Sequence record: LC727697.1
Direction: 5' to 3' (one strand)
Length of the DNA stretch: 64,000 nucleotides
The notes beneath the pieces are model-generated. The model was not told the DNA's origin. It was given only the letters and a program-made list of their open reading frames with translations, and ran no database searches. The translations under genes were made by a program, and so were the position numbers. Shown here piece after piece: positions 17,603-48,530 of this stretch (position 1 is its first letter; every line of letters begins with the position of its first letter).

Positions 17603-17908
17603 CTATTTTCTGAAGAAGAGAATAAGTGTAGTATACTCTTCGCAACAATCATTATTTGCCCATTGAATAGAAAAGGGCAAATTTAAATCTTTTTGAATCA
17701 AATAATTGCTCACAACTGATTCGACATTAATTTGTTCTGCCGAATCTAATTTACCATTTTTGCGAATATTTCGTATTGTAACGGTATTACACAAATTACC
17801 ATTTGTGTAAAATATATCCGAATACTTTACATTAATAGATTTTAGGGCATTAACGATTGTTGTTTGCATATGCTGAAATCCCTTTGAGGCATTCTTTGTT
17901 ATGTACAA
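17603..17908 (-). CDS. hypothetical protein
   Basis: ORF; start uncertain. Confidence 0.55.
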   Translation of the reverse strand: MYITKNASKGFQHMQTTIVNALKSINVKYSDIFYTNGNLCNTVTIRNIRKNGKLDSAEQINVESVVSNYLIQKDLNLPFSIQWANNDCCEEYTTLILFFRK

Positions 17909-18191
17909 ATTTTCTATATTTAGAACCTTCTATATAGAAACTAACAAGTATAATTAGATTGTCATCTCGCACTTGTATACATTTTGAGAACCGTCGCCCG
18001 AACAAATTGTCTATAGTATTAGTTTTGTACTGTAAGAGAGGTATATTAATCATTAATGCAAAATAAGTAACACACAAATTTTAATACATGTAAGATGTAT
18101 TGCACACTGTATTTTAAAATATCAATTGCACTGTTATATAATATATTAACAGCAAATACTTTTAATAGCAACTGATTGTTTATATGCAATT

Positions 18192-20025: not shown

Positions 20026-20029
20026 AATA

Positions 20030-20113
20030 ACAAATGAAATAGAGATGAATAAGGAAATGAATAAGGAAGTGACAAATGAAATAGAGATGAATAAAGAAAT
20101 GAATAAGGAAGTG
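20030..20113 (+). repeat. 42-bp purine-rich tandem duplication
   Basis: ACAAATGAAATAGAGATGAATAA(G/A)GAAATGAATAAGGAAGTG x2. Confidence 0.9.
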
Positions 20114-20132
20114 AATAAGAGAATATCTGCTC

Positions 20133-20410: not shown

Positions 20411-20630
20411 GTATATAGTATATGCATATGTGTATGTAATGTAAATGTTATTTTTATTAATTTACAGATAGTTTCTGTTCTTAATCTTTTCTAAACTATC
20501 AAAAATAAAAGATTAGCCAATGCATCGACAACATGCGCGATTGCATTTTGCATATACACTCAGAACACAAAATGTAAATGCAAAATGCAAATGCGGATCC
20601 GAGTTTGTGCCTAAAATTGAATTTGGAAAC

Positions 20631-21602: not shown

Positions 21603-22266
21603 TCAATTTTTATACAGGAAATCAATATATACATCTATGCCAGTATCTGGAGGCCAAGGATAAGCCCAACATTCGTTACTAGTAATATCTCCCATCACCC
21701 TTTCACTTATTATATTTGAAATACAGAATATACCTATATGATTTTTTAAATTAGTTAATATAATATATTTGTATGGTTTTGATACAAATATTAATTCACT
21801 AACACCATTAAGATTATATAGCCGTGCCATATCATGTCTTATACTAATATAATCACTAGCACTCGAAAATATTAATATTTCAATCATATGGTTTGTGCAT
21901 ATCCTTTATACATATCCTCGTAAATTCTGATACTATTAGTACCTATTAATGAAAATATAGTTATTCTATCAGCATCTCGAAAATATGTAGGTTTTGAAAA
22001 TCTAAGAATGTCATAAAAATGACAATCTATAAAGTGACATCCTCTTTGCAATTTAAATATATTGAATTTCATACTAGTATACCTGTATCTAAAAATCTAT
22101 ATATTGCAGCGTTTACATAGAATGTTTGATGTATATATTTTGTTATTGCAGGTAATACATATGTAGCGCCTACAGAATAATTATAATAGGTATCATTACT
22201 AATGTATATTCTATTCGATTTCATCAAAATAGATGAAGAATTATAAGACAGATCGAATATATTCAT
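21603..22266 (-). CDS. three small ORFs (21603-21887, 21884-22072, 22069-22266), microprotein family-like
   Basis: EILIFSSASDYI, NIFKLQRGCHFI, NIFDLSYNSSSI; overlapping stop/start. Confidence 0.6.
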
Positions 22267-24335
22267 CTACTGTAAAACTCGGATGTATTACAATTCTGCT
22301 ATTCGTTTTATATAATACACAAATTGAATCATAATTTACATCTTTAATGAAATATGTATGATAAAAAAGTCTGATAGTCATGCAATTTTGTGATATTACA
22401 AATATACGCATATCATTTAAGTATTTTTATATCTCGGGAATACCTACCGCTGTCGTTACGTTCAATTAGAATGTAATACACATTGCCTGACTTAAAACGA
22501 GCTTTCTGCAAAGATATGGAACATAATGTGAGTTGATATTGTAATAGATCATTCATATAGTATGCCTATTTAAAAGAATTCTTCTTACACTATTAAAATT
22601 TATATAAATTTATTTTCAACTGAGCACAATAATATTGTATAGTTCCTAAAAGACAATATGAATTATATATTTCTATTGAATCACTATGTTGTCTGTCTAT
22701 TTTGTAGCAACTAGCAGACAATTTAAATACCCAATCGATCATTTTAGTTTTAGATTCTAAAAGTATTTTATTTTACTTACAATCTTAATATAAAATATAA
22801 TTCTTTAATAATAGGTGATTCTTTGTTTGTATCTTTATTCATAAATTTTTATGCCGAAAAATACAACTTGTTTTTGTTAATTAATACTTCGGTGATCGGG
22901 CGGCAGAAATATAGCATGAAATAACTCAATTTCCTCGCCGGCTTTTTCATAAAAATGCAAGTGACGCCACATTAACTCCATCTTAATTGTATCCACCCTG
23001 CGTTGGAACTGTAGCAATATATCTAACATATATGTAGTCCTGTACAATAAATTACCACTAACATTTTTCCATAAATATAAACTTCAAATGTTTTATTAAA
23101 AATAGAAAAACTAATTAAAGAAACATTAAAAGAAATAAAAATAAGATTATACACCATACAGTATAGTTCGTGTAGTTTGACACGGAAAGATAGTAATATT
23201 ATTATATATTATGGAAACTGATATTACTGATCTAGTAAATGATTCAAATGATATAGACTCTACACCGCTGCATACAGTTAAAATGTAATTATATTTGAGA
23301 GTATCTATATATTCTAACATTTTAAGAATTGTTTATTAATATATAACATACCTGACTTAATATATACAATAAGACAGGAAGGCTGTCGAAAAATCTTTAT
23401 TTTATCTGCACGATTAGACATATACAACAGTGTAGTGAAATGATGATCTTGCATTATAGTTTCCCACACGTTGTATAATAATGGTAGTAGTATTTTCCGA
23501 TTGATTTAAATATAGAAACACGTAATACTTTGCTTGTTCTTCTTTCTAATATTATTTTTGACGTGTTATGTGATATTAGAACTATATTTTTACGAATCAT
23601 ACAATACTATAAAGTAATTCAATACATGTCGTATAGTTAATAAGCATATATTATATGAAAGATAATCCTATACATGCAAATGTAACCTACATTATACAGA
23701 TATAGTTCTTAAGATGCAACGCAATTATGTACAAGTGAGAGATATATTGAAATTCTTGCAGAATCATATCGCACAACATGAACTCTAAAAGTATGATTCT
23801 GAATAACAAATATAGAAACATTTTTCTTTGCTGCTCTATTCATTTATTACTCTCATGTATTAGTAATTAACGATATGTTTATTTGTATCTAATTATTACA
23901 ATGAAATGTATGTCATCATTTTTGTTTAGAAAGTTCACAACTAAAATATCACTGTTTTTACAAAAACGAAACATAATATTAGAAGTATTGTAAGAACATT
24001 CAAGGATACTGGTCATGTTATATATGCAAACGAGTCTACCATATAAAATGCAAGACCGTCTTTTGCCTTTATGAGTATCGAGTAGTATACTATATCTCTA
24101 AGTCTTGCTGTATTTGCACATATTTCGTATGCATGCGATGAAAATTCTATTATATCTTTTATACCATTCATCTTAGATATGCAACACTAATTATAATAAT
24201 TTTTTCATTACTATTATAAATGCATGCTAATAGATACGTGCTACATAGCGATGAATCTATTGTATGTGCGCATGAAGATACCTGCAACATATCATAATGT
24301 ATATCGTGATTTATAATATTTTTATTTATGAACAT
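22241..24335 (-). CDS. string of 45-56 aa single-unit microprotein ORFs below the ORF-track cutoff
   Basis: Manually translated: 22241-22411 MRIFVISQNCMTI, 22413-22556, 22593-22742 MIDWVFKLSASCYKI, 22877-23029 MLDILLQFQRRVDTI, 23314-23454 LLYMSNRADKI, 23454-23600 NIVLISHNTSKI, 23879-24016 MTSILECSYNTSNI, 24013-24171 DIIEFSSHAYEI, 24168-24335 DMLQVSSCAHTI. Confidence 0.6.
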
Positions 24336-25542
24336 TTATTCTAATTCTAACATATGAATCTGAATACACATTAATACCTGTTGGGGATATTCTAGTATAC
24401 CATCTATTAAGATAGTGTTGAATACAAACTATATTATGAATTGATACCGGCGACATAAGTGTTAACGCTTGTTTGTGTGTAAACGAACATAATGTATAGG
24501 ATATGACGACGCATTATAAAATACTAAACAATGAGCACTAGTTATATAATTAGTATTAAACCGGTGCGTATTAAGCGATAATTCAACTATATTACTTATT
24601 GGTTTTTTCATTTAATTTATATGTTAGAGTAAGAAAATTATTGCATTCTACTTGTAATATATTACATTCACATGCATCAAAATAATATATGCTGATATGA
24701 CGTACATTATACTGTATGTAGAATACGTTCTTATATAAGCCCGGGGGTATCATCATATAAAATCAATCTACCGTACTCATAATATATAATAACACTAAAA
24801 CGATTAACTGATATATAGCATGAGTTAAATGAAATGTATGTTATTTTATCAATATCTGTTGCCATTATTAAACTGTATTACATACAACCAGATTCTATAT
24901 AATTTAATATGTTCTTAGATAACATTAATTGTAAACACATAATTGCCATGTCTGTCATACATTTTAATCTTGTATACAATGCGTCTGACATGTATAACAC
25001 AAATATAGCAAGTATTGCGTGATAAGAGAAATATTCCCATTTGTTTTAATACACAACAAAGATAATTTTATTATTTTTATTTAAGAAGAAAATGTTATAG
25101 TAGCTGTCAGTTGTTATATTATATGTATGGTGACATACATACATTAATTCTAATATATTTGTTACCATTTATCTGATACGACCTGCAGAAATATATAGGG
25201 TAGTATACCGCAATGACATAAACGAGCATAGGTATACTTTTTGATCCCATAATATTTTAAATTTAAACATATTTGTACAATATGATAATTTAAATATATT
25301 ATGCATATTAATCCTTTATATAAAAGATTTTTAGAAACAACAATGTCAAAATACTCAACAAACAATACTGTATAACATGTTTTTGCGTTAAATGCAAACA
25401 CGCTACCATAAGCAGCAATGTATTTCGTCGCCGTCTTTATCACAAAACACTATACTATCATAAATAGAATCAAAACAGATAATATGTAGATTTGATTGTA
25501 GTCGTATCAACATTGCAACAGGCGGAATAAAACTTATAAACA

Positions 25543-25842
25543 TTATGACCTTAGTATAATATAATGGAGTGTTTGATACGATTTGTCGTGAATGCACATA
25601 CTGTCTATAACAAATAATATTGCGTGTGTTTTCGATTGTAAGTGTATAATTCCTATTTTGTCTGTAATAGCAGAATATTCAGCCGAAGCCCTTGCATATG
25701 ATTCACTACCCGATGGTACCAATAATCTCTTATATACAGACAGTCTGTAATAAAGTGAATAGTTATTACTATAAAATAGATATGATTTATAAACAGTTTC
25801 TATTTTATGAGCACTGTGTTGAATATACAGTATAAAATCCAT
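25543..25842 (-). CDS. two-unit microprotein family member
   Basis: MDFILYIQHSAHKI ... GIIHLQSKTHAI. Confidence 0.75.
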   Translation of the reverse strand: MDFILYIQHSAHKIETVYKSYLFYSNNYSLYYRLSVYKRLLVPSGSESYARASAEYSAITDKIGIIHLQSKTHAILFVIDSMCIHDKSYQTLHYIILRS

Positions 25843-26132
25843 TAAATATCCCTAGCATATGATGAGTGTATAATGGCATAATTTTTATCATACATATATA
25901 TTGTATGATAAGGTAAACTAAGGGTAAACTTAATAGAATTAATGGCATGTTGCAAATACACCATGCCATTCTTATCATTATTATATAACTTGAATATTAT
26001 TTCAAAATAATATACATATTTGCCTATATCCAAACAAAATATAGTATCACTGTTTATATTTTGAAATACAAATAATGCACTAAACTGTGATATTAGCACA
26101 GTTTTATGCTGAAGTGTTAATATTAAATCCAT
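25842..26132 (-). CDS. two-unit microprotein family member
   Basis: MDLILTLQHKTVLI ... GMVYLQHAINSI. Confidence 0.75.
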   Translation of the reverse strand: MDLILTLQHKTVLISQFSALFVFQNINSDTIFCLDIGKYVYYFEIIFKLYNNDKNGMVYLQHAINSIKFTLSLPYHTIYMYDKNYAIIHSSYARDI

Positions 26133-26145
26133 TTATATTTCTGTC

Positions 26146-26372
26146 TTATTGACAATATATAATACTACGAGTTTTATCATAAAAACAATATACTGAAAAA
26201 CGAAATGTTATTTGCATAGTATTGTTAGACAAATATAATATATCATATTCTTCGTTCATATTTAAAATATAATATAATGAGTTAACCTCGGTTCACGTGT
26301 TTTTACAGTTAATCCAAGTGCCTTCAACGAAATATATTTAGACTGGTTACTAATTAGTAATATATAATTCAT
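26146..26372 (-). pseudogene. frameshifted two-unit family member
   Basis: MNYILLISNQSKYI in one frame, DILYLSNNTMQI in another; one extra T in a T-run would join them. Confidence 0.55.
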
Positions 26373-26376
26373 ATCA

Positions 26377-26679
26377 TTATACATATTCGTTTGTGTCAAA
26401 CAAAGTCTCCCAGTGAATAGAAATAAAATCTACACTATCAAAAAATATACATTTACCGTGTGTTACAAACCGGTGTGTATTCTGCTGCAAATGAATTATA
26501 CCTAGTAGTTCATTAGGAAATGTTTTATAGTTAACAAATCCTCCCTTTTTATTACAAAAATATATTGAGTCGTATTCATTAATAAAGAACCTTATTTGTA
26601 AAGTTTCTATATCATAAAAACAACCTTGTATTCTTATAACTTCACTGCTAAGGATCAATATAATATCCATACTAGTCAC
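26377..26679 (-). CDS. two-unit microprotein family member
   Basis: MDIILILSSEVIRI ... GIIHLQQNTHRF. Confidence 0.75.
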   Translation of the reverse strand: MTSMDIILILSSEVIRIQGCFYDIETLQIRFFINEYDSIYFCNKKGGFVNYKTFPNELLGIIHLQQNTHRFVTHGKCIFFDSVDFISIHWETLFDTNEYV

Positions 26680-26939
26680 CAGCCAAAAATTATTACGCCA
26701 TTGTGGTTTAGTATCATAAATTCATCAAATCTATTAAATGATATAGTATCACAATTGTACTGTAAATAAAACATACCTACAATGTCATTACTAGCATGGC
26801 AATTTAGATACCCATTAATTTTCTGTATCTGATTTAGAAAACGATATAACGTGTTATAATCGGGCAGAACAAGTCGAATTTCACAATCAGTATAAAGAAT
26901 CCATTCGACATTACGCTGAAGCATTAATATTAATAACAC
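26676..26939 (-). CDS. two-unit microprotein family member
   Basis: LILMLQRNVEWI ... GMFYLQYNCDTI. Confidence 0.75.
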   Translation of the reverse strand: MLLILMLQRNVEWILYTDCEIRLVLPDYNTLYRFLNQIQKINGYLNCHASNDIVGMFYLQYNCDTISFNRFDEFMILNHNGVIIFGW

Positions 26940-26951
26940 AAATTCCGTCCT

Positions 26952-27242
26952 CTACAAACTAAAAAAATGACCGCCTTTACTATCTAGAAAACAAATCATA
27001 TCCATTTGATGTTTTTCATTAAGAAAATAAAACTTATTTGTATGCACTTGTAAATGTATAATTCCTATTACATCATTTATAACAGAGTACGAAACAAAAT
27101 GTTTCATACTGAAACCATGATGATCTATTAATGAATATGCTACTTCATTAGTATCAAAAATATCAAATCCGTGCGAAGCCCTTCTAATCGAACAACACAA
27201 TTTCTGTATAAACAGGATAAAATACATTACTAAAGTATACAA
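26952..27242 (-). CDS. two-unit microprotein family member
   Basis: MYFILFIQKLCCSI ... GIIHLQVHTNKF. Confidence 0.75.
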   Translation of the reverse strand: MYTLVMYFILFIQKLCCSIRRASHGFDIFDTNEVAYSLIDHHGFSMKHFVSYSVINDVIGIIHLQVHTNKFYFLNEKHQMDMICFLDSKGGHFFSL

Positions 27243-27514
27243 ATATATTGAATTAGATCTTCATACACATTAGTCATACGACATATTATAGAACGGGTAC
27301 TATAACTTATTTGTAATGAATGTATGCTATTCTGCAAATGCATTATACTAGTTTCGTTGTTTATACTATTACACGAACAATAGGCATACATACGCCCATT
27401 CGGCGGACGTAATAACGATACTATAGTATAATCACTATAGTCGATCATATCTATAATATAATCTGAATACCAAATCTTAAAACAACGAGACTGAAATAAT
27501 AATATTAAGTCCAT
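27230..27514 (-). CDS. two-unit microprotein family member
   Basis: MDLILLFQSRCFKI ... SIMHLQNSIHSL. Confidence 0.75.
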   Translation of the reverse strand: MDLILLFQSRCFKIWYSDYIIDMIDYSDYTIVSLLRPPNGRMYAYCSCNSINNETSIMHLQNSIHSLQISYSTRSIICRMTNVYEDLIQYICIL

Positions 27515-27517
27515 ATA

Positions 27518-27835
27518 TTAGACAAAACTATTGTATATAGCATGTTGAAGAAAACCGTTAGCAAACACCATATTAACAATAATATCTGTTTTACCAGAAA
27601 CTGATTTTAAATGTTTAACTTCTATTAACGATAGAATAGATTGCATATGCAATAATCCTATCACATCACATAAATTATTATACAAACAATATGCATCATA
27701 TGACACATGTTTTCTCCCCATAGGCAACGTAATTCCATATACGAACTCCCTATTATGCGCATTAAGCATATCAATGATTTGTTTGGTATATACAATCTCA
27801 TGACACTGAGATTGAAGTAATAGTATGAAATCCAT
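27518..27835 (-). CDS. two-unit microprotein family member
   Basis: MDFILLLQSQCHEI ... GLLHMQSILSLI. Confidence 0.75.
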   Translation of the reverse strand: MDFILLLQSQCHEIVYTKQIIDMLNAHNREFVYGITLPMGRKHVSYDAYCLYNNLCDVIGLLHMQSILSLIEVKHLKSVSGKTDIIVNMVFANGFLQHAIYNSFV

Positions 27836-27838
27836 ATA

Positions 27839-28108
27839 TTATTTCAAATCAACATGTATTTCATGTACAAACCTATTATTATTAGCAAAAGTAAAAGAAA
27901 TATAATTGTCCGTATGCATGAAAAATTTATAATTACAGTATTGTAAATGAAGAATACCAAGTAAGCAATTGATATTTCTATAATACAGTCTAATACCGTT
28001 ACCTGTAATCATAGCTATATGCTTTTCATTCTTGTTGTTAAGACGGACGTACCATTCACTATAGTCCATCTCTACAGTATTATGTTGAAGAAATAGTATC
28101 AGATCCAT
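27839..28108 (-). CDS. two-unit family member, recent duplicate of 28112-28384
   Basis: MDLILFLQHNTVE ... LLGILHLQYCNY. Confidence 0.85.
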   Translation of the reverse strand: MDLILFLQHNTVEMDYSEWYVRLNNKNEKHIAMITGNGIRLYYRNINCLLGILHLQYCNYKFFMHTDNYISFTFANNNRFVHEIHVDLK

Positions 28109-28111
28109 ATA

Positions 28112-28384
28112 TTATTTCAAATCAGCATATATTTTATGTACAAATCTATTATTATTAACAAATGTAAAAGAAATATAATTGCCCATATACTTGAATAAAA
28201 AATCATAATTACAATATTGTAAATGAAGAATACCAAGTAAGCTATTAATATTTCCATAATACATTTTAAAACCGTTATCGGTAATCATAGCCATACTATC
28301 TTCATTCTTGTTGTTAAAACGAATGCACCATTCGCACGCGTCTATCTCTACAGTATTATGTTGAAGAAATAGTATCAGATCCAT
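28112..28384 (-). CDS. two-unit family member, recent duplicate of 27839-28108
   Basis: MDLILFLQHNTVE ... LLGILHLQYCNY. Confidence 0.85.
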   Translation of the reverse strand: MDLILFLQHNTVEIDACEWCIRFNNKNEDSMAMITDNGFKMYYGNINSLLGILHLQYCNYDFLFKYMGNYISFTFVNNNRFVHKIYADLK

Positions 28385-28534
28385 AACTAGTTGTCCTGTA
28401 TATACGTTATACTACGAAATGGAATTATATTAACAAGCGTACAGTAGGTGAGTTGTATAGAGTCACGGTTTATATACGTATAGCATACTATATTCCGTAT
28501 ATGTTATGCAAACGGGAATATATAATGAAACCGG

Positions 28535-28770
28535 CCTATATAGCAAGAATTGGAAATTTTCAAAAAAAATATTTTTTATTGAAAAAGAACTTATATTTTA
28601 TAAGAAGGTCCCTATATAGCAGAAAACGGATTTTTCCAAAAAAAATCTATAAAAATGGTTAGAAATGGCTAGAAATGGAAAGAAAATGGATGTAACTGGG
28701 AAGAATATAAATGTAACTGGAAAGAAAATGGATGGGACCTATAGAGCAAGATTTCCAAAATTTTGGTCCT
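28535..28770. repeat. three CCTATA(T/G)AGCA motifs with A/T tracts and AAATGG repeats
   Basis: Copies at 28535, 28611, 28738, each followed by a TTT(C)CAAAA element. Confidence 0.75.
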
Positions 28771-28814
28771 TCTTTCTTCGGTGATGTTAGGGTTCACCGA
28801 AATATGTACTATAT

Positions 28815-29150
28815 AATTCACTTATTATTTGTACACTATCACTATCTTATTAGTATCACTCAGTATCACTCATTATTTGTACACTATAGCTATCTATCAG
28901 TATTGGTATTAGTATCACTTCTATAAGTATCACTCATTATTCACTATCTATTGGTATTATCAATCAACATTATTCATTATTTGTTACACTATAGCTATCT
29001 CAGTATTAGTATTTTAGTATTAGTATCTATCAGTATTATCACTCATTATTTGTATACTATAGCTATATCTATCAGTATTAGTATTATCACTCATTGGTTG
29101 TTACACTATAGTTTCTATCTATTAGAGTATTATCACTCATTAGTTATAGT
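28815..29150. repeat. imperfect tandem repeats (about 5-6 units)
   Basis: TCACTCATTATTTGT(T)ACACTATAGCTATCT..AGTATTAGTATT recurring. Confidence 0.85.
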
Positions 29151-29181
29151 GTAGTGATTTCTATCATTCATCTTCATTACT

Positions 29182-31468
29182 TTAATAAAGTCTTCTTGAA
29201 TAACATTTTGTATTAACTGATAACCAATTACTATTACACATAGATAAAACAAAGGGATGAATGTGTATTGTATAAATTATATGCTGAAGATAACACATGA
29301 TTATATTGTTATTATTAAAGTTATTGATATGTATGTAACAGTTGAATTTGTTATTGTATATACCTAATTCTAATAATCTATTTCTATCAGAATATAATAC
29401 AAAATCATTAGTTAGAAACTGTATTGTAGTTGTGTATGATTGTAATGTTATAATAAATTTCATTTATGGTTATAGTTATGGATGTATATAAAAAATATTA
29501 AATCCGTACATACATCATATATTTTTATTAGGTAATATGCACGTTGTAGTATATGTGTTTTAGACTGTAAATGTAGTATGCCGAAAATATCATTAAAGAC
29601 ATTATAGTCTATGTCTACTACGGTCTTTTTGTTCTTGCGTGTTATAAGATAAAAGCATTTTCTATCTGAGTTAATTAAACGATAAGTAGTATCAAATTGG
29701 GATATATATCTAGTTTTATTTTGCAGTGCGAGGATTAGGTTCATATGATAGAGTGAACTATATAGTGGGAAGTAAAGATTACTAGTGAGTTCCGTGTGGT
29801 AGATATTAAAGTTGTTTGACTTTGTATATGAAGAATGCAGATTTCGTTACACAACTTATCGTAGTTCGCACGCACATATACACGGGATATTATTTTTTGG
29901 ATCTTTATTTCTATTATAGGTTGGTCATGTACGTTATATAGTGTTAAGCCGTGACGGGTGCTGCCAGAGTGGGTGGATTTTTTAATTTGATTTACTTCTG
30001 AAGAGATAAGTTTAATATAGTCCATGTGTTATAATATAATAAACGTTTCTATGGTACATATTTCTCATTCTTATCATATAATAAGAATTTGATGATTCTT
30101 GATGTATAGTGTGTGTATTTTGTTGTAGATAGAGTATTGCAGTTTTGTCATTAAAAATACCTAGATATATGAACATAGAATTTGTTATATCTATGTCTAT
30201 TACTGGCATTTCGTCTTCTGTGTATAATTCTATAATACTATTACGATATAATATAATAGAAGTGTTATGTTGTAGTAGGAAAATAAAATCCATAATTATA
30301 TAACCAAGGTATTGTTGCAAAGATATGGATACGCTAGAAAATGGCTATGTACAATGGGATAACTAATAGTTTTTGTGTTATGTTGAATATAACAGATTAA
30401 ATCAATGTTTAGTAATAATTTGCTAATGTAAATTTTAGTTTGGCCATACATGTAATGGCAAATTATAATTTCTTTAGTTTTATTAATGACGATTATATAG
30501 TTAGCATATGCACTTATTGTATGTGTTAAATGTGAGATATGTATTATCATTTGATTTTCAACCGAATATATGATTCGTCAAAAACCAAAGCGTATGATTT
30601 TTCCATTCTTTTGATCTTCTTTATTTTATTAGATATAATAACTAACGTAGATTCTGACATTTGAAACTGGTTTATTCTTAAAAATGTCTGGCAGGTCCAT
30701 GTAGAAAATGATAAACAAAAAGATGCTACTTTTATATAATCGGTATTTACAAGAATAAATCTAACAGCATTTAGACCATCATGCGGTATGATTTTACTGG
30801 TGTTTCTTAATAATTCAAGTATTAAATTCATAATATTCTTTACATAACATTGTATTAAGTAATGAATTGACATTTAGTCTATAATACGTAATTGTGTTTA
30901 TTGTTTTTATTGAATCGCATTTGTATTGTATATACAAAGGATCTATTTCGTTAAGCATACTAAAACACATTCGAAAATTAGAAATAGTAACAACTGAGCA
31001 TAGAAACACAAATCCATTTATATTAGCAATGTATATGCCTGGACCTCTTGTATTGTTAAAATACTGTCCGTAGATTAGTTTGTGGGAATTACTTGATATG
31101 ATAAATGGTAGGTTGCACATAGGGTTTAGATGGACATTAATCTGCTCATTAAAAGAGTTTAATAATGTAGTTTCTGTACAACAACTATTTAAATGATAGT
31201 TCACATACTTATCTTTTTAAATATAGTGAGGTATGGGAGAGTTATATAATAATATTCGGTGTGAATGGTTTAATTTTATCGTTTTTGCATTATTAGAAAT
31301 ATAAAATAGTAAGAAATCAGATTCACTCATATAATGCCATAGAATGTTAGTATCTATAAATGCGGTTGGATATATTTGCGCTAATCTATTACCATACACA
31401 GTAAGTTCTAATTCATTAAACTGTGCATTTAGTTCATATGTAAAGTGTGAAAGAAGTATAACAATCAT
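29182..31468 (-). CDS. eight tandem two-unit family ORFs (29182-29463, 29460-29744, 29741-30025, 30012-30320, 30296-30550, 30547-30873, 30815-31204, 31217-31468)
   Basis: e.g. MKFIITLQSYTTTI/MCYLQHIIYTI; MNLILALQNKTRYI/GILHLQSKTHIL; MDFIFLLQHNTSII/AILYLQQNTHTI; LFYISNNAKTI. Confidence 0.75.
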
Positions 31469-31488
31469 GCATTTTTGCCCATTTAAGA

Positions 31489-34400
31489 CTATGTTATTTT
31501 TCTAAATAACGTCAAATAATATTTGTTAGAAAATACTTCTAAGAAGTTGTTATGCATTGATATTGATCTTGTGACCGATTGTATCAAAATAGGAATTATT
31601 ATATCGTTACATATAACTTTTTTAAATAATAGTACGCCATTTATAAATATGCAATTGTTATCACCTTTGTATATTTTTAGTGTGTACAAACATTTTCTAA
31701 TTCTTTTTCTAAAACTGATTTCTATAGATATAGTATCAGCTATACTACTCAGAAATATTAACAACATACACTTGTCGTTCGGTATTTTATATACCATTTT
31801 TCGATCTATACCTTATAGATAATTATAATACCACATTATTTTTTTATCAGTTAATATACGCACCCGGTTATCAGTGAATGCTATGTACCCGCATTGTTTA
31901 GATGCTATAAATACTGCCCTATTCCACAAACTAAATGGATTACTATAAAAGTTATAATTTACATTATAATAAACAGAAGGTTTTGTGTATATAGAACATA
32001 TGCCAGAGTAAATTACAATTAATCTAGCTTTATTAGATATTTCTAAAATTTCGTCATAATAAATTTTATGCATAGTCAGAATTATTTTAACCATTTGCCG
32101 TGATAATATCTTCTTCCTATAGCAAGGAAAATGTATTCATCGTCTATATCTTTAAATGATACTTTAATGTCCACAGCACCCCATACAACAAGTGATGTAG
32201 TTGTGTGCTGTAATAGTAGAATACGATATATGGAATCTAACTTTATGTTATGAAGTACAACTGCGCCTTTTCCTGTTCTTCGGTTTATCGAAAGAACATG
32301 ACCGCCTAAACTCGTTATTAACGTGATACAGTCCGTGTCAAAGAAGATTTCGGAAGTTGATGCTTGAATGTTAATGATAATATTCATATATTTTATTCAC
32401 AATTGCACATTGTTTTTTATTATTGCACATTGTGCATGTTATAGCAACTGAAAAAGTTATTGGTAAAGACCTTTCCATATAAGTGTACCATTATATGATA
32501 TGCAAATTGCATACTTATTATCGAATATTACGCGGCAAAATGATTGTATTATAAAAGGAGATAGTGTAAACACACACAAATATAAATGATGTATTCTGCT
32601 AGCAGCACGGGAACCCATGTATGGTATAGATATGCTATAAAATATGATTCCAGCAGCGTTGAACAAGTCTACACAGTTATGAGAAAATGAAGTTATATAA
32701 GTCTCTTTACTTAACAATAGTATTAATTCATCGTTCATAACATATTTGTACGAAATACAGCATCTGCTGATATATTAGATTTATTTTGACGGAAAAGTAT
32801 AATAGACGGTAAATATACCAGTTTATTTGTATAATATTGTATAATTATAGGTAATGAAATATAGTTTAACCAACTGTTATCTATATAAGGAAAATTACAC
32901 ATACCATGCAAGTGTATTGGTATTATTTTATAAAAGAATATACCTTTATTGCCAACAAAGGTAATATTTGTGTCGAATATAATACAATTTGTGTTATTAC
33001 TTATATGTAATATAAAATCATATTTCATTAAGTATAGATATCCTAATTAACACAACTAGTCATGATAACGCCATTGCAATTGCGTATAAAAGCATATCTG
33101 GGGGTGACATAAATTTCGGAACAATTTTTACTTATATAAATGATAATAAAACTATCTGTTATTAATTCGTCTACAACAATTAATGACTTAGTTTTAGATA
33201 AAAAATTTATAAAGTATACCACTTTATTATAATTTTGAAAACGCACAACATCGTCTAATAATGCTATCTGTTTAGTATTAATAGAAATTGTAAGTATTAA
33301 TTTAGTCATTTAAAGGTATATAGTATGTATAATAACTGTTTAGTGCAATAACACGACAATCTGAGTAACATGCAGCATATATTGTATCTGTGTGATAAGA
33401 TAATACCAATATATTAAATATGCATCCGGTAGGAAATAGATTTTTCATTAATAATTTATTTTATCTAATTGACATATTTAATAGTGTCACAATAACTAGT
33501 ATACACTAATTAAAATTAATGGTATGATATTTATGGTGTAACTTGATCTGATTTAGCAGATACGTTACTAAGACAATAAAATATCTTTAACTTAGTAGTA
33601 GTTACCTGTATCTTTTCTCTACCAATAATAAATAAAAGCTTATTACAATATTTAGACGTTAGTAAGATTTTTTGTTTCCAATCAAAATCGAAAATGTCGA
33701 TTGGGTGTCCTGCGGCTGAACGTATTGCATAAAATACTCTATTGTGTTTATTAATTAAATAAAATGTAGTTATATTAGAACACTGGACAGCTATCTCGCA
33801 CGAAATATAAAATATATTGTCCATCAAATTACCTATGTATTGTACAATTATATTAGTAAGTGACAATCTTAGAGAAAAATTGACCTACTTTTGTGAGCAC
33901 ATATATTTGAATTAATTCGTGATGCACAGAAAATTTAAAAATATCTGTGTAAAACTGAACTAGTGCGGGAATCTCATATATTGTCCCCCAGCCATTACTT
34001 CCGTCGTCTATCACTACCGGATGTGAATTAAGATTTTTTGTTACAACATAGATACATTTTTGATCAAATCTGTATAATAAGAATGTGCTATTACTCGTTG
34101 ATGTTATATAGTATGTATTGTTTGATATAAAAAGAATAATATCCATTTAGTGTTCCGCATTTAATTAACTTGTACACTAACATACAACACTTAATAACAC
34201 AACAGAGTTTTTATAATGAATAATACATAAGATATCACATTTTTCTGCAAATGTACTGTCACTGACCTATGTAATATAACAAATCTGTTAAAGATCTTCT
34301 GTCATCAGAATAAAAATAAAATACTACTTTATCGTATATTCTTAGTTCAGTGATGTGTTTACATTTACATGACAAAATAAAAATAAATAATTTTTTAAAT

Positions 34401-34925
34401 ACTGATATATCGAGATTTAACATAAGTGATACTGTTTTACCATATTTTACTTCTGTTATATATTTGATTATATCGTTAGAGGGGCTAGTTCGAATATATA
34501 TTATATTGTTTATATGTCCGATTGACCGGTCTATACCTATTTGTATATTATCAATGCTAGCTATACAAAATATTAAATTCATTTTATAATAAAACAGAAA
34601 TATTTATAATTACAGAAGATGAATAACAAGACGAATATGTCATATTCGTATCAACTACTGACAGTAGTATATTTCTGTTATTATTTTTTATTATAAAACT
34701 TGCATTATCTGCTCCATATGCTATCGTGTGTGTATGGTTACATAATGCAATAATATCTATACTGCAATTATTATAGGATATAAATGAACAATTATGCCAG
34801 TTTTTGAGATGATATGCTGTAAATTCTCTAGCTCCTGTAGTATTATTAATGGTAACTATACATCCGTATTCTGCTTCTAATTTTCTACTTCTTATAAAAT
34901 TCTGAACATATAATATATTATTCAT
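31489..34925 (-). CDS. ten tandem family/family-like ORFs (31489-31797, 31813-32094, 32082-32387, 32457-32738, 32735-33028, 33043-33309, 33531-33866, 33853-34146, 34259-34582, 34584-34925)
   Basis: e.g. MNIIINIQASTSEI/RILLLQHTTTSL; DFILHISNNTNCI/PIIIQYYTNKL; MDIILFISNNTYYI/PALVQFYTDIF. Confidence 0.7.
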
Positions 34926-35412
34926 TTATGATACGCCGTAACAAAGGTGTTGGATCTAATAAATTTTCAGGTCTGCTAGTATTTAATTGCCATAATCCAA
35001 TAGAATTTGTAGTTCCTTTTGTATATCGTTCTACGTGAAGCATAGACATAGGACGTCCTTTGTTCTTTTTTAACACTTGTTCTACTCTGCCGATACATGT
35101 TCCAGCTGGTACAGTATCTCCTATGTTAATCCAATTTCCTACTAATATTTCGCCGTATACCCATACACCAAATACGTCTTCTACTACTAATGCACTTGTT
35201 TTATTCCACCAAGGTGTTCCGCAACCTGGTCCTGTAAAATCTTTTATTATATTAACTACTTTACCCGATAGCATTGTAAACACAGGTTCTTTATTTTTAC
35301 AATAAAGGTCTACGCCTTCGTGTATATGATTTTTTCGTTGGTATGCAAATCCGCCCGGATGTGTGTAATCTGGGATATTATTCAATTCTATAAATGGTTT
35401 TTGAAATATCAT
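34918..35412 (-). CDS. M23/LytM-family peptidase-like protein (possibly degenerate)
   Basis: HEGVD (HxxxD) motif, PV....G.V, LHVE; the usual YxH is YGE and HxH is MLH. Confidence 0.75.
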   Translation of the reverse strand: MIFQKPFIELNNIPDYTHPGGFAYQRKNHIHEGVDLYCKNKEPVFTMLSGKVVNIIKDFTGPGCGTPWWNKTSALVVEDVFGVWVYGEILVGNWINIGDTVPAGTCIGRVEQVLKKNKGRPMSMLHVERYTKGTTNSIGLWQLNTSRPENLLDPTPLLRRIINE

Positions 35413-37496
35413 ATTATGTAGGATACGTTTATCATAGTATATGCTTTTAACTTCCGAAATGATATAGTAAACAAATGCGAAGAACTGTGTAATTGAGTGT
35501 CATTGTACGAAAAAATCGTATCTCTTGCACGATGCGAAACATTACACACATCTATTATATGAATAGGAGTACACAGTATACTGGATACAACTTTTGTTAT
35601 AGGCCTACCCATTCCGAATATAACAAAATGAAACGATGTATAATTACTCAGTCTTATTGTATACGAATATCTTGTTATATTGCATAATATACTTGAATCA
35701 GACATATCATATTGTAGAAAATGTATATTCATATACAGCTATAAACTTATTGTTGCGTTCTGTTATATATTGAATTATATAATTACCAAATACATCTGCT
35801 ATACAAAATGTAACGAAATCACTATACGCATCTTCAGATATAGACGTGCATCTAGCAGTAATTGATACAATATATGTAATGCTAGCTGACATACGATATT
35901 CTATATCTGCAATATACTTCATCTGCAATACGGGGTCTTAATATACCCACAGAGCATATAGTATTGTGCATTATATCATCTAATACATATGTACTGTTTC
36001 TATATCTGTTTTTTATAGAATACACTGTATTGACTAATTTAAATAAATCTATTTTGAATTCATTTTTATATTTTAAGGTACATAATCCTGTAGTTAAATT
36101 AGTTGCCCATAAAATTATAGTAATATTAGGTGAAATATATAACGACCATATAGTGATTGTATGGTCCATTACCTTTATACTTCGTGTATTTTTAGAAATA
36201 TAATAAATTTTTTCTATATTAGAATGCATGTCCGAGCCCATGTGTGATTTTTGTAACTATATAACAATCCGTTTCCTTTATTATTAATAATACATACAGA
36301 TCTAGTTTTATAATACATCTCTGAGGCCATTTTAATCATAAAACATTTACTAGATAAAGACAGTACACATATATCATTTTTAAATGTGTAAATGTATGAT
36401 AAGTGCTCTGAATCATGGTTTAAATTATATCTTACAAAAAAGTTTAATGTTTTTGTTGGTTTGTCATATAATCCTTCTATACTTATAACACTGTTACCTA
36501 TAACAGCCACGTTTGAGCATCCTGCTTGCATTTCTAGTATATTGTTTTCCTTCATTTCAATACCTTATTTAAGAAATAACTAAACACAAATTATATCACA
36601 TGTTTATACAAAACACACCGGATCCCAATTATGGAACCGAGAACCTTGTATATCTATATTTAAGAAACATGGATTTATACCTAATGCTACTGCACGGTTT
36701 GATTCCATTTCTAAGTATAAAGTAGGATAGTCGAAACATATAATACAACACAAGGTAGACACCAAAAATACATTGATATGTAGATTTTTTGCAAACATAG
36801 AATACAAAGACGATTCTTTGTTACTGTAATGGAATACTTTCATGTTTTCTGAGTTAACAATAAAAAACCCGTAATTGTATTTTGAGTTATCTATTTCTAT
36901 TTTGTCACAATTGCTTTGTAATTTAATGATAAACACTTAAAATACCTTATATAATTTTGTTAAATTAACCCAACACGAATGGATAGTCAAGCATTTTGCG
37001 GTTCTTTGTCCTGTACATCTAACTCAGCAATAGTTGTACAGATTTTACTAGAATTGCAATAATAAGAATATACATAAAGAAGTTACATTTTTAGTTTGGA
37101 ATTTAAATGCAAATGGTGCGTTATGGTCTTATGCTAAAATACATTCATTTATGCTAATACTATTTCGGATGAATAATTTTTACTACTAATACTATCATTT
37201 GCTATTTCATTGTATAAAATTGTACTTGAGTTACTGTCTGTCAATACTACTACTATTCTATTAATAATATAAGATGATATTTTTTGTGTTAATAGCTGAA
37301 TCTTAAATATATCTAAGTATATCAAACTATTGTTATATGTATAGTCTACAAACCACGACTGTAATGAATTTTCAATTTCTACACAATAAAATATATTATT
37401 ACCACGTCTATCTTTGATAATAAAATTATAGCGGTATGACCGGTCGTCTGGTTGTATTGTTTCCTGCAAAGCACTTAGCGTTATTATAGTATTCAT
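35409..37496 (-). CDS. family-like ORFs (35409-35732, 35882-36241, 36214-36555, 36604-36936, 37149-37496)
   Basis: NNILEMQAGCSNV/VLSLSSKCFMI; MFIIKLQSNCDKI/VFLVSTLCCII; KIYYISKNTRSI. Confidence 0.65.
36962..36990 (-). promoter_or_regulatory. sigma70-type promoter
   Basis: AAAATGC-TTGACT-17-TAATTT. Confidence 0.65.
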
Positions 37497-37604: not shown

Positions 37605-38216
37605 TTAGCCATTCTCTTCTCTTACTTTTTTTGCAATCACTTTAAACAATCCTGGATTTACTTTAAGTGCTTGAGGAATTATATTATGTCGAATTTGATT
37701 TCTATTAAAATTAGTGTCTCGGTTACTAGGATCTTCTAACCATTGTACACCATTACTTTTCGCATATTTTTTAAATTCGTTTTTTGTAGTAAGCATAAAC
37801 GGTCGGATGACATTTTTTTTCCGATACGGAATGATACGAGGCGAACCGTGCATACTATAAAACAACCACGTCTCTACGTTGTCGTCTAGTGTATGTGCAG
37901 TCATGATTTCTAATTCATGAGAGTGCAGAAATTTATATCGTTCGTTTCGCCAATGTTCTTCCCAACTGCAACCTTTTGGTTTTTTTGTGTTAATGCAGTA
38001 TACATGGCAATTTATTTTATTGTCGCTACAATAATCTCTCACAAATTGCTCTGCTTTGATATCATACTCCGATCCGTGGTTTACATGAAAGACATCGAAG
38101 TTATTTTGTGGATATTTCTTTAAGAAGGACAATGCAACCATAGAATCAATACCGCCCGAAACAGCGATACCAAATTTCTGTCCATAATATGCAATGGGTT
38201 TTACTAACTTAATCAA
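37605..38216 (-). CDS. tilS: tRNA(Ile)-lysidine synthetase, catalytic domain only
   Basis: PP-loop AVSGGIDS, HVNHG, R.ERY, TAHTLDDNVET, IRPF, W.EDPSN.D..FNRN.IRH. Confidence 0.9.
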   Translation of the reverse strand: MIKLVKPIAYYGQKFGIAVSGGIDSMVALSFLKKYPQNNFDVFHVNHGSEYDIKAEQFVRDYCSDNKINCHVYCINTKKPKGCSWEEHWRNERYKFLHSHELEIMTAHTLDDNVETWLFYSMHGSPRIIPYRKKNVIRPFMLTTKNEFKKYAKSNGVQWLEDPSNRDTNFNRNQIRHNIIPQALKVNPGLFKVIAKKVREENG

Positions 38217-46387: not shown

Positions 46388-47293
46388 ATATCTTGTGCAA
46401 CTAATGATAGCTTTGTAATAATGCTTTGTATGCGTAACATTATATACTGTTTTGTTTGTTCGGTCAACTATTTTTATTAAAATATATATCTATACAATTA
46501 AGTAATGATCGACGTAACATTTATGAAAATAACTACCACTATTTATTAAGTATAAAGCTATTACGGATTTCTCACAAAAAGTATTTTTACTGACTACAAA
46601 CCCTTTGTAGATTTTTGCATGACATACGATGCGTTCTAAATAGTACGAATAGGAAAAAATACAGTTCATTATCATCATCTTAGCCGTACAATATAACAAT
46701 TCTTATCTAGCCGAACATACCATACTATTTCGCCAGAATAAACACAAACTATGGATTCCGACCATTTTAATAACGACAATTTACATATCAATGTTTTATG
46801 CGAAATAGTTAAAATTTTTTCCATTCTTTATTCTATGTAATAAAGTTAATAAGAAATACTAAGTATACCGCAATATCGATAATAAACAGAATTGCTATAT
46901 ATTATCTAAGCACTTCCGGTATTTGTTACAATAAAAATATTATGTATTATAGAATATAACGGAACATCGGATGCAAATAGTATCTTATCTTAAATATCAT
47001 AGTAATAGAAAGGATAGTAACAGATCTATTATCGCATAACGATATTATGTTGAAACAAGGCATGTATATTACTTCTGTTGAGTATTGTAAATTAATAATG
47101 TATTTCATTTTTTAATTCTATATTGCATTGTATTTCCATGCCATAGAAAATGTACCGATATCAAAATGTACCCATAATGTAAAAGATCTATTATTTTTTA
47201 TAGTGACTACTAACTTGTTTAATACGCGATATTCTATTACGTATGTGTTGGCAGATATATGCATTATTTCATTCATAATAAAAATATCATAAT

Positions 47294-47325
47294 AAAAAAG
47301 GAACATACCATAATATGTTCCTTTT
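47294..47325 (-). terminator. intrinsic terminator
   Basis: AAAAGGAACAT..ATGTTCCTTTT. Confidence 0.75.
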
Positions 47326-48332: not shown

Positions 48333-48527
48333 TCATACACTTCGGTAATAAAAGTATTTAATTACCAGGTTCCCACGTTTATCTGGTAGAATTAGAGACA
48401 TTCGTTGTAAAATATAACTAAAATTGTAATGCAGTCTTACAACTCTACTTCTGCTGCTTATATGTAATATAGTTTCAAATGTAACTATTTTGTCGTTATT
48501 CTGTCTTATATAATCATAAGTGTTCAT
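48333..48527 (-). CDS. hypothetical protein
   Basis: ILHISSRSRVV family-like motif. Confidence 0.5.
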   Translation of the reverse strand: MNTYDYIRQNNDKIVTFETILHISSRSRVVRLHYNFSYILQRMSLILPDKRGNLVIKYFYYRSV

Positions 48528-48530
48528 ATA

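What the first reader, a model, noticed from the sequence alone, without database searches (positions are those of the whole stretch)
21603..37496. Array of about 16 kb with at least 40 hyper-diverged paralogous microproteins
Seen: head-to-tail minus-strand ORFs, mostly with overlapping stop/start, share the motif (D/N)-h-h-x-h-(Q/S)-x-x-(T/C/A)-x-x-I (h = hydrophobic) at the N-terminus and again mid-protein (e.g. MDFILYIQHSAHKI...GIIHLQSKTHAI). Outliers occur at 18.2 kb and 49.0-50.2 kb. Outside the motif the sequences are almost unalignable by eye, very AT-rich and Ile/Tyr/Asn-rich. I recognise no known family. Inference: a gene accordion with a conserved scaffold and variable surface, such as a library of anti-defence binders or decoys, or interchangeable blades of a hetero-oligomer.
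Basis: partly seen in the sequence, partly recalled or inferred. Interest (0 to 1): 0.85.

Follow-up and report, generated by a model that had tools for sequence, protein, structure and literature searches.

The report
Jumbo-phage array of small paralogous proteins
A Pseudomonas jumbo phage devotes about 16 kb, next to the edge of its long terminal repeat, to some 40 very diverged copies of one small, previously undescribed protein module that selection keeps intact; what the proteins do is unknown.

Summary
The window is the first 64 kb of Pseudomonas phage 30-2, a PA5oct-like jumbo phage of the genus Wroclawvirus. A profile HMM finds 51 copies of a ~45-residue module in 31 ORFs. All lie on the minus strand, none on the plus strand, and shuffled windows give about 0.3 hits each. 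Looser tests that no control passes raise the count in 21.6-37.5 kb to about 39-46 genes.

Genes carry one module (~40-65 aa) or two (~85-105 aa). AlphaFold gives each module a helix, which holds the motif, followed by a 3-4-strand meander. Pfam, PHROGs, PADLOC and PDB give no match. A search of 1.84 billion representatives finds only PA5oct-like phages, and the other 223 kb of the genome has no copy.

The ORFs stay open in relatives. dN/dS is 0.27-0.48 in three zones and 0.5-0.97 (not significant) in three. Stop-creating changes number 4 against about 57 expected.

By synteny with PA5oct, the array straddles the boundary of the 39-kb terminal repeat. It has no strong promoter of its own.

I read it as a real, translated, genus-specific multigene family. 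A role as host-directed binders is inference only. The "accordion" label is weakly supported.

The parts
21603..25543 (-). Zone A: 23 short head-to-tail ORFs (35-94 aa, median 48), mostly one-module size. The motif sits within the first ~20 residues.
   Evidence: ORFs. Three pass the unit HMM, 11 pass hhalign at E<=0.004, and 10 of 23 exceed the 95th percentile of shuffled ORFs in the motif score; the union is 14. dN/dS is 0.27-0.48 with significant synonymous excess. 21-22 of 22-23 are open in each relative. They do not alternate N-type and C-type modules.
25543..28384 (-). Zone B: 11 ORFs, nine with two modules (82-105 aa) and two with one module (37 and 40 aa). By synteny these are the first genes inside the terminal repeat.
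   Evidence: HMM E-values 1e-14 to 1e-21. dN/dS 0.36-0.48. No stop-creating changes against 3.6-4.9 expected per relative. Orthologues are PA5oct gp2-gp11.
27839..28384 (-). The only recent tandem duplicate: genes 27839-28108 and 28112-28384.
   Evidence: 276-bp period, 86% nt and 73% aa identity. Ettore, 30-3 and PA5oct carry only the orthologue of 27839-28108. dN/dS between the two copies is 0.76, and both motif helices are unchanged.
28385..29181 (.). 0.8-kb non-coding gap that splits the array. It holds degenerate ~46-bp and 21-bp tandem repeats and is the inferred boundary of the direct terminal repeat.
   Evidence: Repeats. PA5oct position 1, the start of its annotated 39,080-bp terminal repeat, aligns to window ~28783, and PA5oct 286749 aligns to 28866.
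29182..30550 (-). Zone C: five two-module ORFs (84-94 aa).
   Evidence: HMM E 1e-11 to 1e-19. dN/dS 0.50-0.56, synonymous excess not significant. One orthologue is 81-98% identical across the 11 genomes. Ettore has one extra copy here.
30547..32094 (-). Zone D: five diverged ORFs (83-108 aa) that keep the N-terminal motif.
   Evidence: All five exceed the 99th percentile of shuffled ORFs in the motif score. Four of five have hhalign E 6e-4 to 3e-3. dN/dS 0.55-0.85, not significant.
32082..34146 (-). Zone E: seven ORFs. Five are clear two-module members; 33302-33448 and 33531-33824 are weak.
   Evidence: HMM E 3e-8 to 8e-17. dN/dS 0.34-0.48 with synonymous excess.
32082..32387 (-). Two-module member orthologous to PA5oct EST35_0450.
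Evidence: Synteny. 'gp450' is reported as highly transcribed early (PMC7318152), but the same label already appears under an older numbering in the 2018 preprint, so the match is uncertain.
34259..37496 (-). Zone F: eight diverged ORFs (71-119 aa), four or five of them weakly related to the family.
   Evidence: 36604-36936 passes the unit HMM. 34584, 35882 and 36214 have hhalign E 1e-3 to 2e-3. 37149 is supported by motif score only. No Pfam or PHROG match. dN/dS 0.57-0.97, not significant, but 8 of 8 are open in every relative.
34918..35412 (-). Non-family gene embedded in the array: M23-peptidase-like protein (164 aa).
   Evidence: Pfam Peptidase_M23 E=5e-5, below the curated cut-off; PHROG endolysin families at E=1e-5. 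dN/dS 0.13-0.18.
17850..18077 (-). Outlying one-module member.
   Evidence: Unit HMM iE=7e-8; ORF.
46947..47108 (-). Outlying one-module member inside the tRNA cluster.
   Evidence: Unit HMM iE=1e-8; ORF; tRNAs.
47118..47306 (-). Outlying one-module member inside the tRNA cluster.
   Evidence: Unit HMM iE=5e-9; ORF.
48333..50237 (-). Second mini-array. Members 49013-49321, 49318-49575 and 49914-50237 are HMM-supported; 48333-48527 and 49585-49911 have the motif only. An unrelated 161-aa HExxH protein (48531-49016) interrupts it.
37605..38216 (-). Upstream neighbour: TilS-like PP-loop protein (tRNA-Ile lysidine synthetase in the PA5oct annotation).
   Evidence: Pfam ATP_bind_3 E=1.7e-36; annotation.

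Best explanation
What is shown:
- The region is a genus-specific multigene family of small proteins built from one ~45-residue module.
- The module is an N-terminal amphipathic helix carrying h-h-x-h-(Q/S)-x-x-(T/C)-x-x-I, followed by a 3-4-strand beta meander.
- Genes hold one module or two.
- They form a tightly packed, co-directional array on the strand used for early transcription in PA5oct.
- They are kept open by selection at the protein level. That selection is relaxed.

What is inferred by synteny with PA5oct:
- The array straddles the left boundary of the 39-kb direct terminal repeat.
- The half at 21.6-28.4 kb therefore lies at the physical end of the packaged DNA and is present twice per virion.
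- The half at 29.2-37.5 kb ends the unique region.

What is inferred about mechanism:
- The genes are transcribed mainly by read-through, because the array has no strong promoter.
- They are translated largely by coupling, because Shine-Dalgarno sites are weak.
- They yield a repertoire of small intracellular proteins that share a hydrophobic core and differ over the rest of the sequence.
- These proteins act as binders of host, or host-defence, components. One-module members may pair to rebuild the two-module fold.

My estimates: real family 0.9; translated and selected as protein 0.8; host-directed binder repertoire 0.35.
For: - Family statistics.
- Protein-level rather than DNA-level conservation.
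- Two independent AlphaFold models give the same H-E-E-E-E-H-E-E-E order (pLDDT 77.7 and 67.7).
- Purifying selection: dN/dS 0.27-0.48 in zones A, B and E, with synonymous excess at P<=0.01 in most comparisons.
- Stop-creating substitutions: 4 observed against about 57 expected, summed over zones and relatives.
- Open frames: at least 50 of the 58 array ORFs (57 in PA5oct) are open in each relative.
- Core columns are more constrained than the rest.
- Position at the repeat boundary.
- Early transcription comes almost only from the Watson strand, which is the array strand in PA5oct (PMC7318152).
- A proven nuclease inhibitor, PA5oct gp52, lies in the same terminal repeat.
- Surface charge varies widely and few ORFs look membrane-spanning.
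- The family is confined to this part of the genome and to this genus.
Against: - I could not reach any direct evidence of translation. The supplements of the PA5oct paper are not held, and the Paride supplements do not list these genes.
- On the minus strand there is no sigma-70 site with 0-1 mismatch between 44418 and 15877.
- The published 'highly transcribed early' set is gp34-gp105 and omits the array genes gp2-gp33. The 'gp450' exception may be a numbering carry-over.
- Shine-Dalgarno matches of 4 nt or more occur at 22% of array starts, against 41% for other genes.
- In zones C, D and F, dN/dS does not differ significantly from the neutral expectation.
- The comparisons with relatives share history, so they are not independent. 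Defining the ORFs in the window also biases the stop count; roughly half of the expected stops are affected.
- There is no similarity to any protein of known function, so the binder role is argued from context only.
Confidence: 0.4

Rival explanations
1. Birth-and-death family with little individual function. The genes are translated and weakly selected, but most copies are dispensable. They drift under AT mutation pressure, and a phage with spare capsid capacity tolerates them.
For: - dN/dS is 0.5-0.97 and not significant in zones C, D and F.
- dN/dS is 0.76 between the recent duplicates.
- The array has the lowest GC and GC3 in the window: 0.274 and 0.218, against 0.359 and 0.300.
- Translation signals are weak and there is no strong promoter.
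- Whole-gene gain or loss occurs between close relatives.
Against: - Stop-creating changes are strongly depleted in all zones.
- At least 50 of the 58 array ORFs (57 in PA5oct) are open in each relative.
- Zones A, B and E show clear purifying selection.
- Gene order and count are nearly the same in four genomes.
Confidence: 0.25
2. Small-ligand sponges with a fold like the glyoxalase/bleomycin-resistance (VOC) superfamily. Paired alpha+beta modules would form a cup that sequesters small molecules such as immune signals or toxic compounds. One-module genes would pair as dimers.
For: - Two different paralogues, modelled separately, both give VOC-superfamily binding proteins as the top PDB matches: 3vcx at E=0.059, and the mitomycin-binding protein 1kmz at E=0.045.
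- The helix-then-strands module is present once or twice per gene.
Against: - The matches are not significant (TM 0.37-0.38, E>0.04).
- No Pfam glyoxalase hit and no PDB sequence hit.
- No conserved His, Glu or other pocket residues; the conserved columns are hydrophobic core.
- The first strand of the canonical module is missing.
Confidence: 0.1
3. Interchangeable subunits of a hetero-oligomeric assembly, in the cell or in the virion.
For: - One- and two-module genes coexist.
- The core helix is conserved and could serve as an interface.
Against: - No array gene carries the 'structural protein, ESI-MS/MS' label that PA5oct uses for its virion proteins.
Confidence: 0.1
4. A function at the DNA level. 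The stretch would be AT-rich spacer or recognition DNA at the terminal-repeat boundary, used for packaging, replication or binding of host nucleoid proteins, with the ORFs incidental. Alternatively it is a decaying pseudogene array.
For: - The array surrounds the inferred repeat boundary, and its repeat-bearing gap lies there.
- GC is lowest here.
Against: - Conserved columns vary in synonymous codons.
- No DNA repeats occur outside the gap and the one duplicate.
- Frames and start-motif register are kept, stops are depleted and synonymous changes are in excess.
- Members also lie far from the boundary, at 18, 47 and 49-50 kb.
Confidence: 0.05

Closest known systems
Early 'host-takeover' gene clusters in phage terminal repeats (Bacillus phage SPO1 terminal redundancy; coliphage T5 pre-early region). 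From my own knowledge, not tested here.
   Same: Many small genes of unknown fold, all in one direction, in or at a long direct terminal repeat, on the early strand.
   Different: Those clusters are not one paralogous family and have strong early promoters. This array is one family with 40-odd members, has no strong promoter, and only half of it lies inside the repeat.
Terminal multigene families of large eukaryotic DNA viruses (asfarvirus MGFs, poxvirus terminal families). From my own knowledge.
   Same: Tandem, deeply diverged paralogues clustered near genome ends, with some gain and loss between strains and a host-interaction role.
   Different: The host domain differs, those proteins are larger and unrelated in sequence, and their function is demonstrated. 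Here the function is unknown.
Poxvirus-type 'gene accordion' (recent adaptive amplification of one gene). From my own knowledge.
   Same: Head-to-tail duplication. One recent pair and two copy-number differences were seen.
   Different: Almost all copies are old (about 30% identity, no DNA repeats), and copy number is nearly fixed among the sequenced relatives.
VOC (glyoxalase / bleomycin-resistance / mitomycin-binding) superfamily
   Same: A fold built from repeated helix-plus-strands modules. It is the top structural match for two separate models.
   Different: Scores are below significance, there is no sequence match, there are no metal or ligand residues, and the first strand is missing.
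Known anti-defence genes of the same phage group (PA5oct gp52, anti-END1)
   Same: Located in the same terminal repeat and also a small protein.
   Different: gp52 lies outside the array and is not a family member. No array protein has been tested.

Membership tests
VOC (glyoxalase/bleomycin-resistance) superfamily | Sequence match to the family's profiles | tested here: not met
   No Pfam glyoxalase hit for 10 members at E<=1. A profile of 21 members against PDB sequences gives only one chance hit, at E=0.86.
VOC (glyoxalase/bleomycin-resistance) superfamily | Significant structural superposition on paired beta-alpha-beta-beta-beta modules | tested here: inconclusive
   VOC proteins top both Foldseek searches, but at E=0.045-0.06 and TM 0.37-0.38. 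The models run H-E-E-E-E-H-E-E-E, without the first strand.
VOC (glyoxalase/bleomycin-resistance) superfamily | Conserved metal- or ligand-binding residues in the cup | tested here: not met
   The only conserved columns are Ile, Leu, Gln/Ser, Thr/Cys, Ile, plus Asp/Asn at the module start.
Gene accordion (recent tandem amplification) | Head-to-tail paralogous copies | tested here: met
   59 co-directional ORFs, of which 25-46 are family members.
Gene accordion (recent tandem amplification) | Near-identical copies, with copy number varying between close relatives | tested here: inconclusive
   One pair at 86% nt identity and two whole-gene differences among four genomes. Otherwise there are 24-25 significant ORFs in each genome, and the paralogues are about 30% identical.
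Terminal-repeat early (host-takeover) module | Located in the direct terminal repeat | tested here: met
   Met for 21.6-28.4 kb only, by synteny with the PA5oct repeat annotation. The repeat of phage 30-2 itself was not mapped.
Terminal-repeat early (host-takeover) module | Strong early promoters and high early transcription | tested here: not met
   No promoter-like site with 0-1 mismatch in the array. The published early set starts at gp34, downstream of the array.
Anti-defence proteins | Homology to a known inhibitor, or demonstrated inhibition of a defence system | not testable with these tools
   No hits in PHROGs, Pfam, PADLOC or PDB.
CRISPR array (label under the match in the Deifobo and Paride records) | Near-identical short repeats separated by unique spacers | tested here: not met
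   The repeats at 28676-29166 are degenerate (64-86% matches) and contiguous, with periods of 21-48 nt. No Rfam match.

The most novel reading that the evidence does not exclude
The phage encodes a combinatorial library. One-module and two-module proteins pair through their conserved helix and first strand, in the way VOC modules pair, and so give many distinct pockets or surfaces from about 45 genes. This would be a sponge or decoy repertoire aimed at varied host immune signals or effectors. It would be delivered from the very end of the injected DNA and be present in double dose for half of the set.
Probability: 0.07. Interest if true: 0.85.

Novelty: new variant of a known kind. Interest (0 to 1): 0.6.

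Why it matters
Phage genomes rarely hold large paralogous families. This one has 40-odd copies and takes about 5.5% of a 287-kb genome. It has no homologue outside one genus among 1.84 billion representative proteins. It also wraps around the boundary of a 39-kb terminal repeat. No paper that I could search describes it, although PA5oct is promoted as a model jumbo phage and its relatives (Paride and others) are of therapeutic interest.

If the proteins act on the host, the array is a compact, naturally diversified set of variants on one small scaffold. That would be useful for learning what such phages target. If instead they are nearly neutral, the array is a clear case of gene birth and death in a phage with spare capacity.

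Many members are missing from the 30-2 and 30-3 records: about 30 of the 59 ORFs are annotated. The region is therefore also a caution for annotating small genes.

Tried and rejected
- Pfam, PHROGs, PADLOC and PDB sequence searches gave nothing usable.
- Foldseek against PDB (two models) and BFVD gave no match at E<=0.001.
- IMG/VR: the family alignment is too diverged to seed a scan. The embedded M23 gene has no relative there.
- The HMM search of 1.84 billion representatives returned two non-phage hits, P0007 and P0022. I rejected both as repeat proteins that merely share a Leu/Gln-rich helix.
- The generic promoter scan is uninformative in DNA this AT-rich: 178 sites found against 156 expected.
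- Supplements: none are held for the PA5oct paper. The Paride supplements do not list the genes.
- Rfam: no credible RNA family in 19.5-38.5 kb.
- Idea that zone A ORFs are two-module genes split in two: rejected, because N-type and C-type modules do not alternate.
- Idea of a uniformly acidic DNA mimic or a membrane protein family: rejected on pI spread and hydropathy.
- Idea that the motif is a DNA signal: rejected on codon diversity.

Full report
IDENTITY OF THE WINDOW
The finding's span matches Pseudomonas phage sp. 30-2 (LC727697.1, 287,165 bp; Arenbergviridae, Wroclawvirus) at 100% identity and at the same coordinates. Ten further PA5oct-like records match at 94-97%. The window also holds 12 tRNA genes at 43.8-48.0 kb. 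GC is 26-29% across the array and 30-45% elsewhere in the window. The 30-2 record annotates only about 30 genes in the span, all as 'hypothetical protein'. Ettore and PA5oct annotate many more of the small ORFs.

Layout. 59 minus-strand ORFs of 35-119 aa tile 21603-37496. The tiling is broken by one M23-peptidase-like gene (34918-35412) and a 0.8-kb non-coding gap at 28385-29181. Most ORFs start with Met followed directly by the motif.

Full-length HMM. A model seeded on 12 ORFs and iterated finds 23 stop-to-stop segments. All are on the minus strand. None are on the plus strand, and none appear in ten locally shuffled copies of the window.

Internal duplication. The two halves of the ~95-aa proteins are homologous: hhalign of the N-half profile against the C-half profile gives E=7e-6.

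Unit HMM. A ~45-aa unit model finds 51 units in 31 segments, again all on the minus strand. Shuffles give about 0.3 hits per window at the same threshold.

Weaker members.
- hhalign of single ORFs against the unit profile gives E<=0.004 for 11 of 23 zone A ORFs, 4 of 5 in zone D and 4 of 8 in zone F.
- None of 59 controls (reversed sequences and non-array genes) scores better than E=0.007.
- A motif score matrix trained only on zones B, C, E and the 49-kb genes puts 10 of 23 zone A ORFs above the 95th percentile of shuffled ORFs. All five zone D ORFs are above the 99th percentile, and 3 of 8 zone F ORFs are above the 95th.

Count in the span: 25 strict, about 39 with control-clean criteria, and about 46 at the loosest.

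Level of conservation. Conserved columns use many synonymous codons: Leu six, Ile three, Thr four, Gln two. The only DNA-level repeats are one duplicated gene pair and the repeats in the gap. The conservation is therefore in the protein.

Junctions. 26 of 58 overlap, and 15 more are 0-15 nt apart.

Members outside the span lie at 17850-18077, 46947-47108 and 47118-47306. The last two sit among the tRNA genes. A second small array lies at 48333-50237.

The remaining 223 kb of the genome has no hit with either model.

WHAT THE PROTEINS LOOK LIKE
AlphaFold2 on two different members gives the same order of elements: helix, four strands, helix, three strands.
- 27839-28108 with 21 paralogues: pLDDT 77.7, pTM 0.63.
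- 32082-32387 with 41 sequences: pLDDT 67.7, pTM 0.49.

The conserved motif is the helix plus the first strand. Foldseek finds nothing significant in PDB or BFVD. In both PDB searches, however, the top hits are small binding proteins and enzymes of the glyoxalase/bleomycin-resistance (VOC) superfamily, at E=0.045-0.06 and TM 0.37-0.38. That fold is itself built from repeated helix-plus-strands modules. I treat this as a lead only. There is no sequence match, no conserved ligand residue, and the first strand of the canonical module is missing.

Members are rich in Ile, Leu, Asn, Tyr and Phe. pI ranges from 4.4 to 10.4, and only 7 of 59 have a membrane-like hydrophobic stretch.

DISTRIBUTION
An HMM search of 1.84 billion representative proteins gave 22 hits.
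- Twenty are 82-105-aa proteins.
- The ten clusters I looked up all come from PA5oct, MIJ3, Paride, Deifobo, Cassandra, Ettore, Callisto, PAC2, 30-3, or unnamed contigs with the same proteins.
- The other two hits are unrelated repeat proteins.

tblastn of one member against 50,697 phage records hits only the 11 Wroclawvirus records. Orthologue identity there is 81-98%. None of the papers I searched on PA5oct, MIJ3 or Paride mentions a paralogous family.

SELECTION
I aligned the array to Ettore, 30-3 and the two ends of the PA5oct record, and counted changes in the window's reading frames.

dN/dS by zone:
- Zone A (21.6-25.5 kb, short ORFs): 0.27-0.48
- Zone B (25.5-28.4 kb): 0.36-0.48
- Zone E (32.1-34.1 kb): 0.34-0.48
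- Zone C (29.2-30.5 kb): 0.50-0.56
- Zone D (30.5-32.1 kb): 0.55-0.85
- Zone F (34.2-37.5 kb): 0.57-0.97
- Embedded M23 gene: 0.13-0.18
- Flanking genes: 0-0.39

Relocation test. I moved the observed substitutions at random among sites of the same base. This gives a significant excess of synonymous changes in zones A, B and E, but not in C, D or F. Stop-creating changes number 4 against about 57 expected, summed over zones and relatives.

Two cautions apply. The relatives share history, so the comparisons are not independent. The ORFs were defined in the window, which removes roughly half of the expected stops from view. Even after halving, the deficit remains large.

ORF integrity.
- In each relative, at least 50 of the 58 array ORFs compared (57 in PA5oct) are open over the same span.
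- The rest differ by 4-5 net frameshifts, 0-1 internal stops and 0-2 changed stop codons per relative.
- By zone these total: A, 3 frameshifts and 1 changed stop; B, 3 frameshifts; C, 2 frameshifts; D, 1 frameshift, 1 internal stop and 1 changed stop; E, 3 frameshifts and 1 changed stop; F, none.

Between orthologues, the motif columns take fewer amino-acid changes than the rest: 5.45 against 7.55 per 100 codons, P=0.005.

AGE AND DYNAMICS
- Paralogue identity has a median of about 30% over aligned positions. Neighbours are only slightly more alike than non-neighbours (33.3 against 29.9, permutation P=0.014).
- One pair is recent: 27839-28108 and 28112-28384, at 86% nt identity. The upstream copy is absent from Ettore, 30-3 and PA5oct, whose single gene is the orthologue of the downstream copy. 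dN/dS between the two copies is 0.76.
- Ettore has one extra gene near 30.0-30.3 kb.
- The number of ORFs with a significant unit is 24-25 in each of four genomes.

This is an old family with occasional gain and loss. It is not a recently inflating accordion.

GENOMIC SETTING
PA5oct annotates a 39,080-bp direct terminal repeat starting at its position 1 (PMC7318152). Position 1 aligns to window ~28783, and the end of the PA5oct record (286749) aligns to window 28866. The repeat boundary therefore falls in the non-coding gap.
- PA5oct gp2-gp33 are the 21.6-28.4 kb half of the array, inside the repeat.
- gp435-gp461 are the 29.2-37.5 kb half, at the end of the unique region.

If 30-2 is packaged in the same way, the first half sits at the physical DNA end and is present twice per virion. 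This is inference by synteny. The 30-2 termini were not mapped.

EXPRESSION SIGNALS
- In PA5oct the array genes are on the Watson strand, from which early transcription almost exclusively occurs.
- The array has no sigma-70 site with 0-1 mismatch. On the minus strand the nearest such sites are at 44418 and 46467 upstream, and 15877 downstream.
- Shine-Dalgarno matches of 4 nt or more occur at 22% of array starts, against 41% of other genes and 7% of other ATG triplets.
- The paper names gp34-gp105 and gp450 as highly transcribed early. That list leaves out gp2-gp33.
- EST35_0450 is the orthologue of 32082-32387. However, the 2018 preprint already wrote 'gp450' under an older numbering, so I give this little weight.
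- No array gene carries PA5oct's virion-proteomics label.
- A protein from the same terminal repeat but outside the array, gp52, has been shown to inhibit END nucleases (bioRxiv 10.1101/2025.03.31.646159).

INTERPRETATION
Shown:
- The family is real and genus-specific, and is built from one- and two-module small proteins.
- Frames are conserved, and protein-level selection is present but relaxed.
- The core is conserved and the remainder is variable.
- The array sits around the terminal-repeat boundary on the early strand.

Inferred:
- Expression is by read-through and translational coupling.
- The proteins form a host-directed binding repertoire.
- One-module members may pair.

I put the binder repertoire at about 0.35. 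Near-neutral birth and death comes second at 0.25. VOC-like ligand sponges and hetero-oligomer subunits are at about 0.1 each. A DNA-level role or pseudogene decay is at about 0.05.

In one search I used a 10-nt generic Shine-Dalgarno ruler typed from general knowledge. It is not a sequence of the phage. I used it only to count matches. Consensus lines printed by hhalign and the alignment tool were not used.

Noticed in passing
window 28385-29181: A non-coding gap with degenerate ~46-48-bp repeats (28816-29166) and 21-bp repeats (28676-28734) lies exactly where the PA5oct terminal repeat begins. It may mark the packaging or repeat boundary. The 'CRISPR' label in the Deifobo and Paride records probably refers to these repeats, which do not look like a CRISPR array.
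   Followed up: partly
window 37605-38216, 45339-45415, 47470-47546, 47951-48027: ATA makes up 8.0% of array codons against 3.9% in other genes of the window. A TilS-like lysidine synthetase gene lies directly upstream of the array, and there are three tRNA genes with anticodon CAT. Some of these may be tRNA-Ile2 for reading AUA in a host with 66% GC.
   Followed up: partly
window 46947-47108 and 47118-47306: Two one-module family members sit between tRNA genes of the phage tRNA cluster, 10 kb from the main array.
   Followed up: partly
window 48531-49016: A 161-aa protein with an HExxH zinc-peptidase motif interrupts the second mini-array. Its only Pfam match is a sub-threshold hit to the ATLF metallopeptidase domain family (E=5e-4, 20 bits, cut-off 27.4). 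I did not pursue it.
   Followed up: no
window 20026-20141 and about 20260-20500: Tandem 12-42-bp repeats lie just beside the stretch that corresponds, by position, to PA5oct ncRNA001. That RNA is reported as highly transcribed throughout infection.
   Followed up: no
window 21603-37496 versus the 30-2 and 30-3 records: About half of the conserved small ORFs are not annotated in LC727697.1 or LC727698.1: all but one between 22.3 and 25.5 kb, and those at 29.2-30.0 kb. Ettore and PA5oct do annotate them.
   Followed up: yes
window 15849-15877 and 44390-44418: These are the only two perfect TTGACA-17-TATAAT sites on the minus strand of the window, and they bracket the array. The first lies upstream of the block that PA5oct reports as highly transcribed early.
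   Followed up: no
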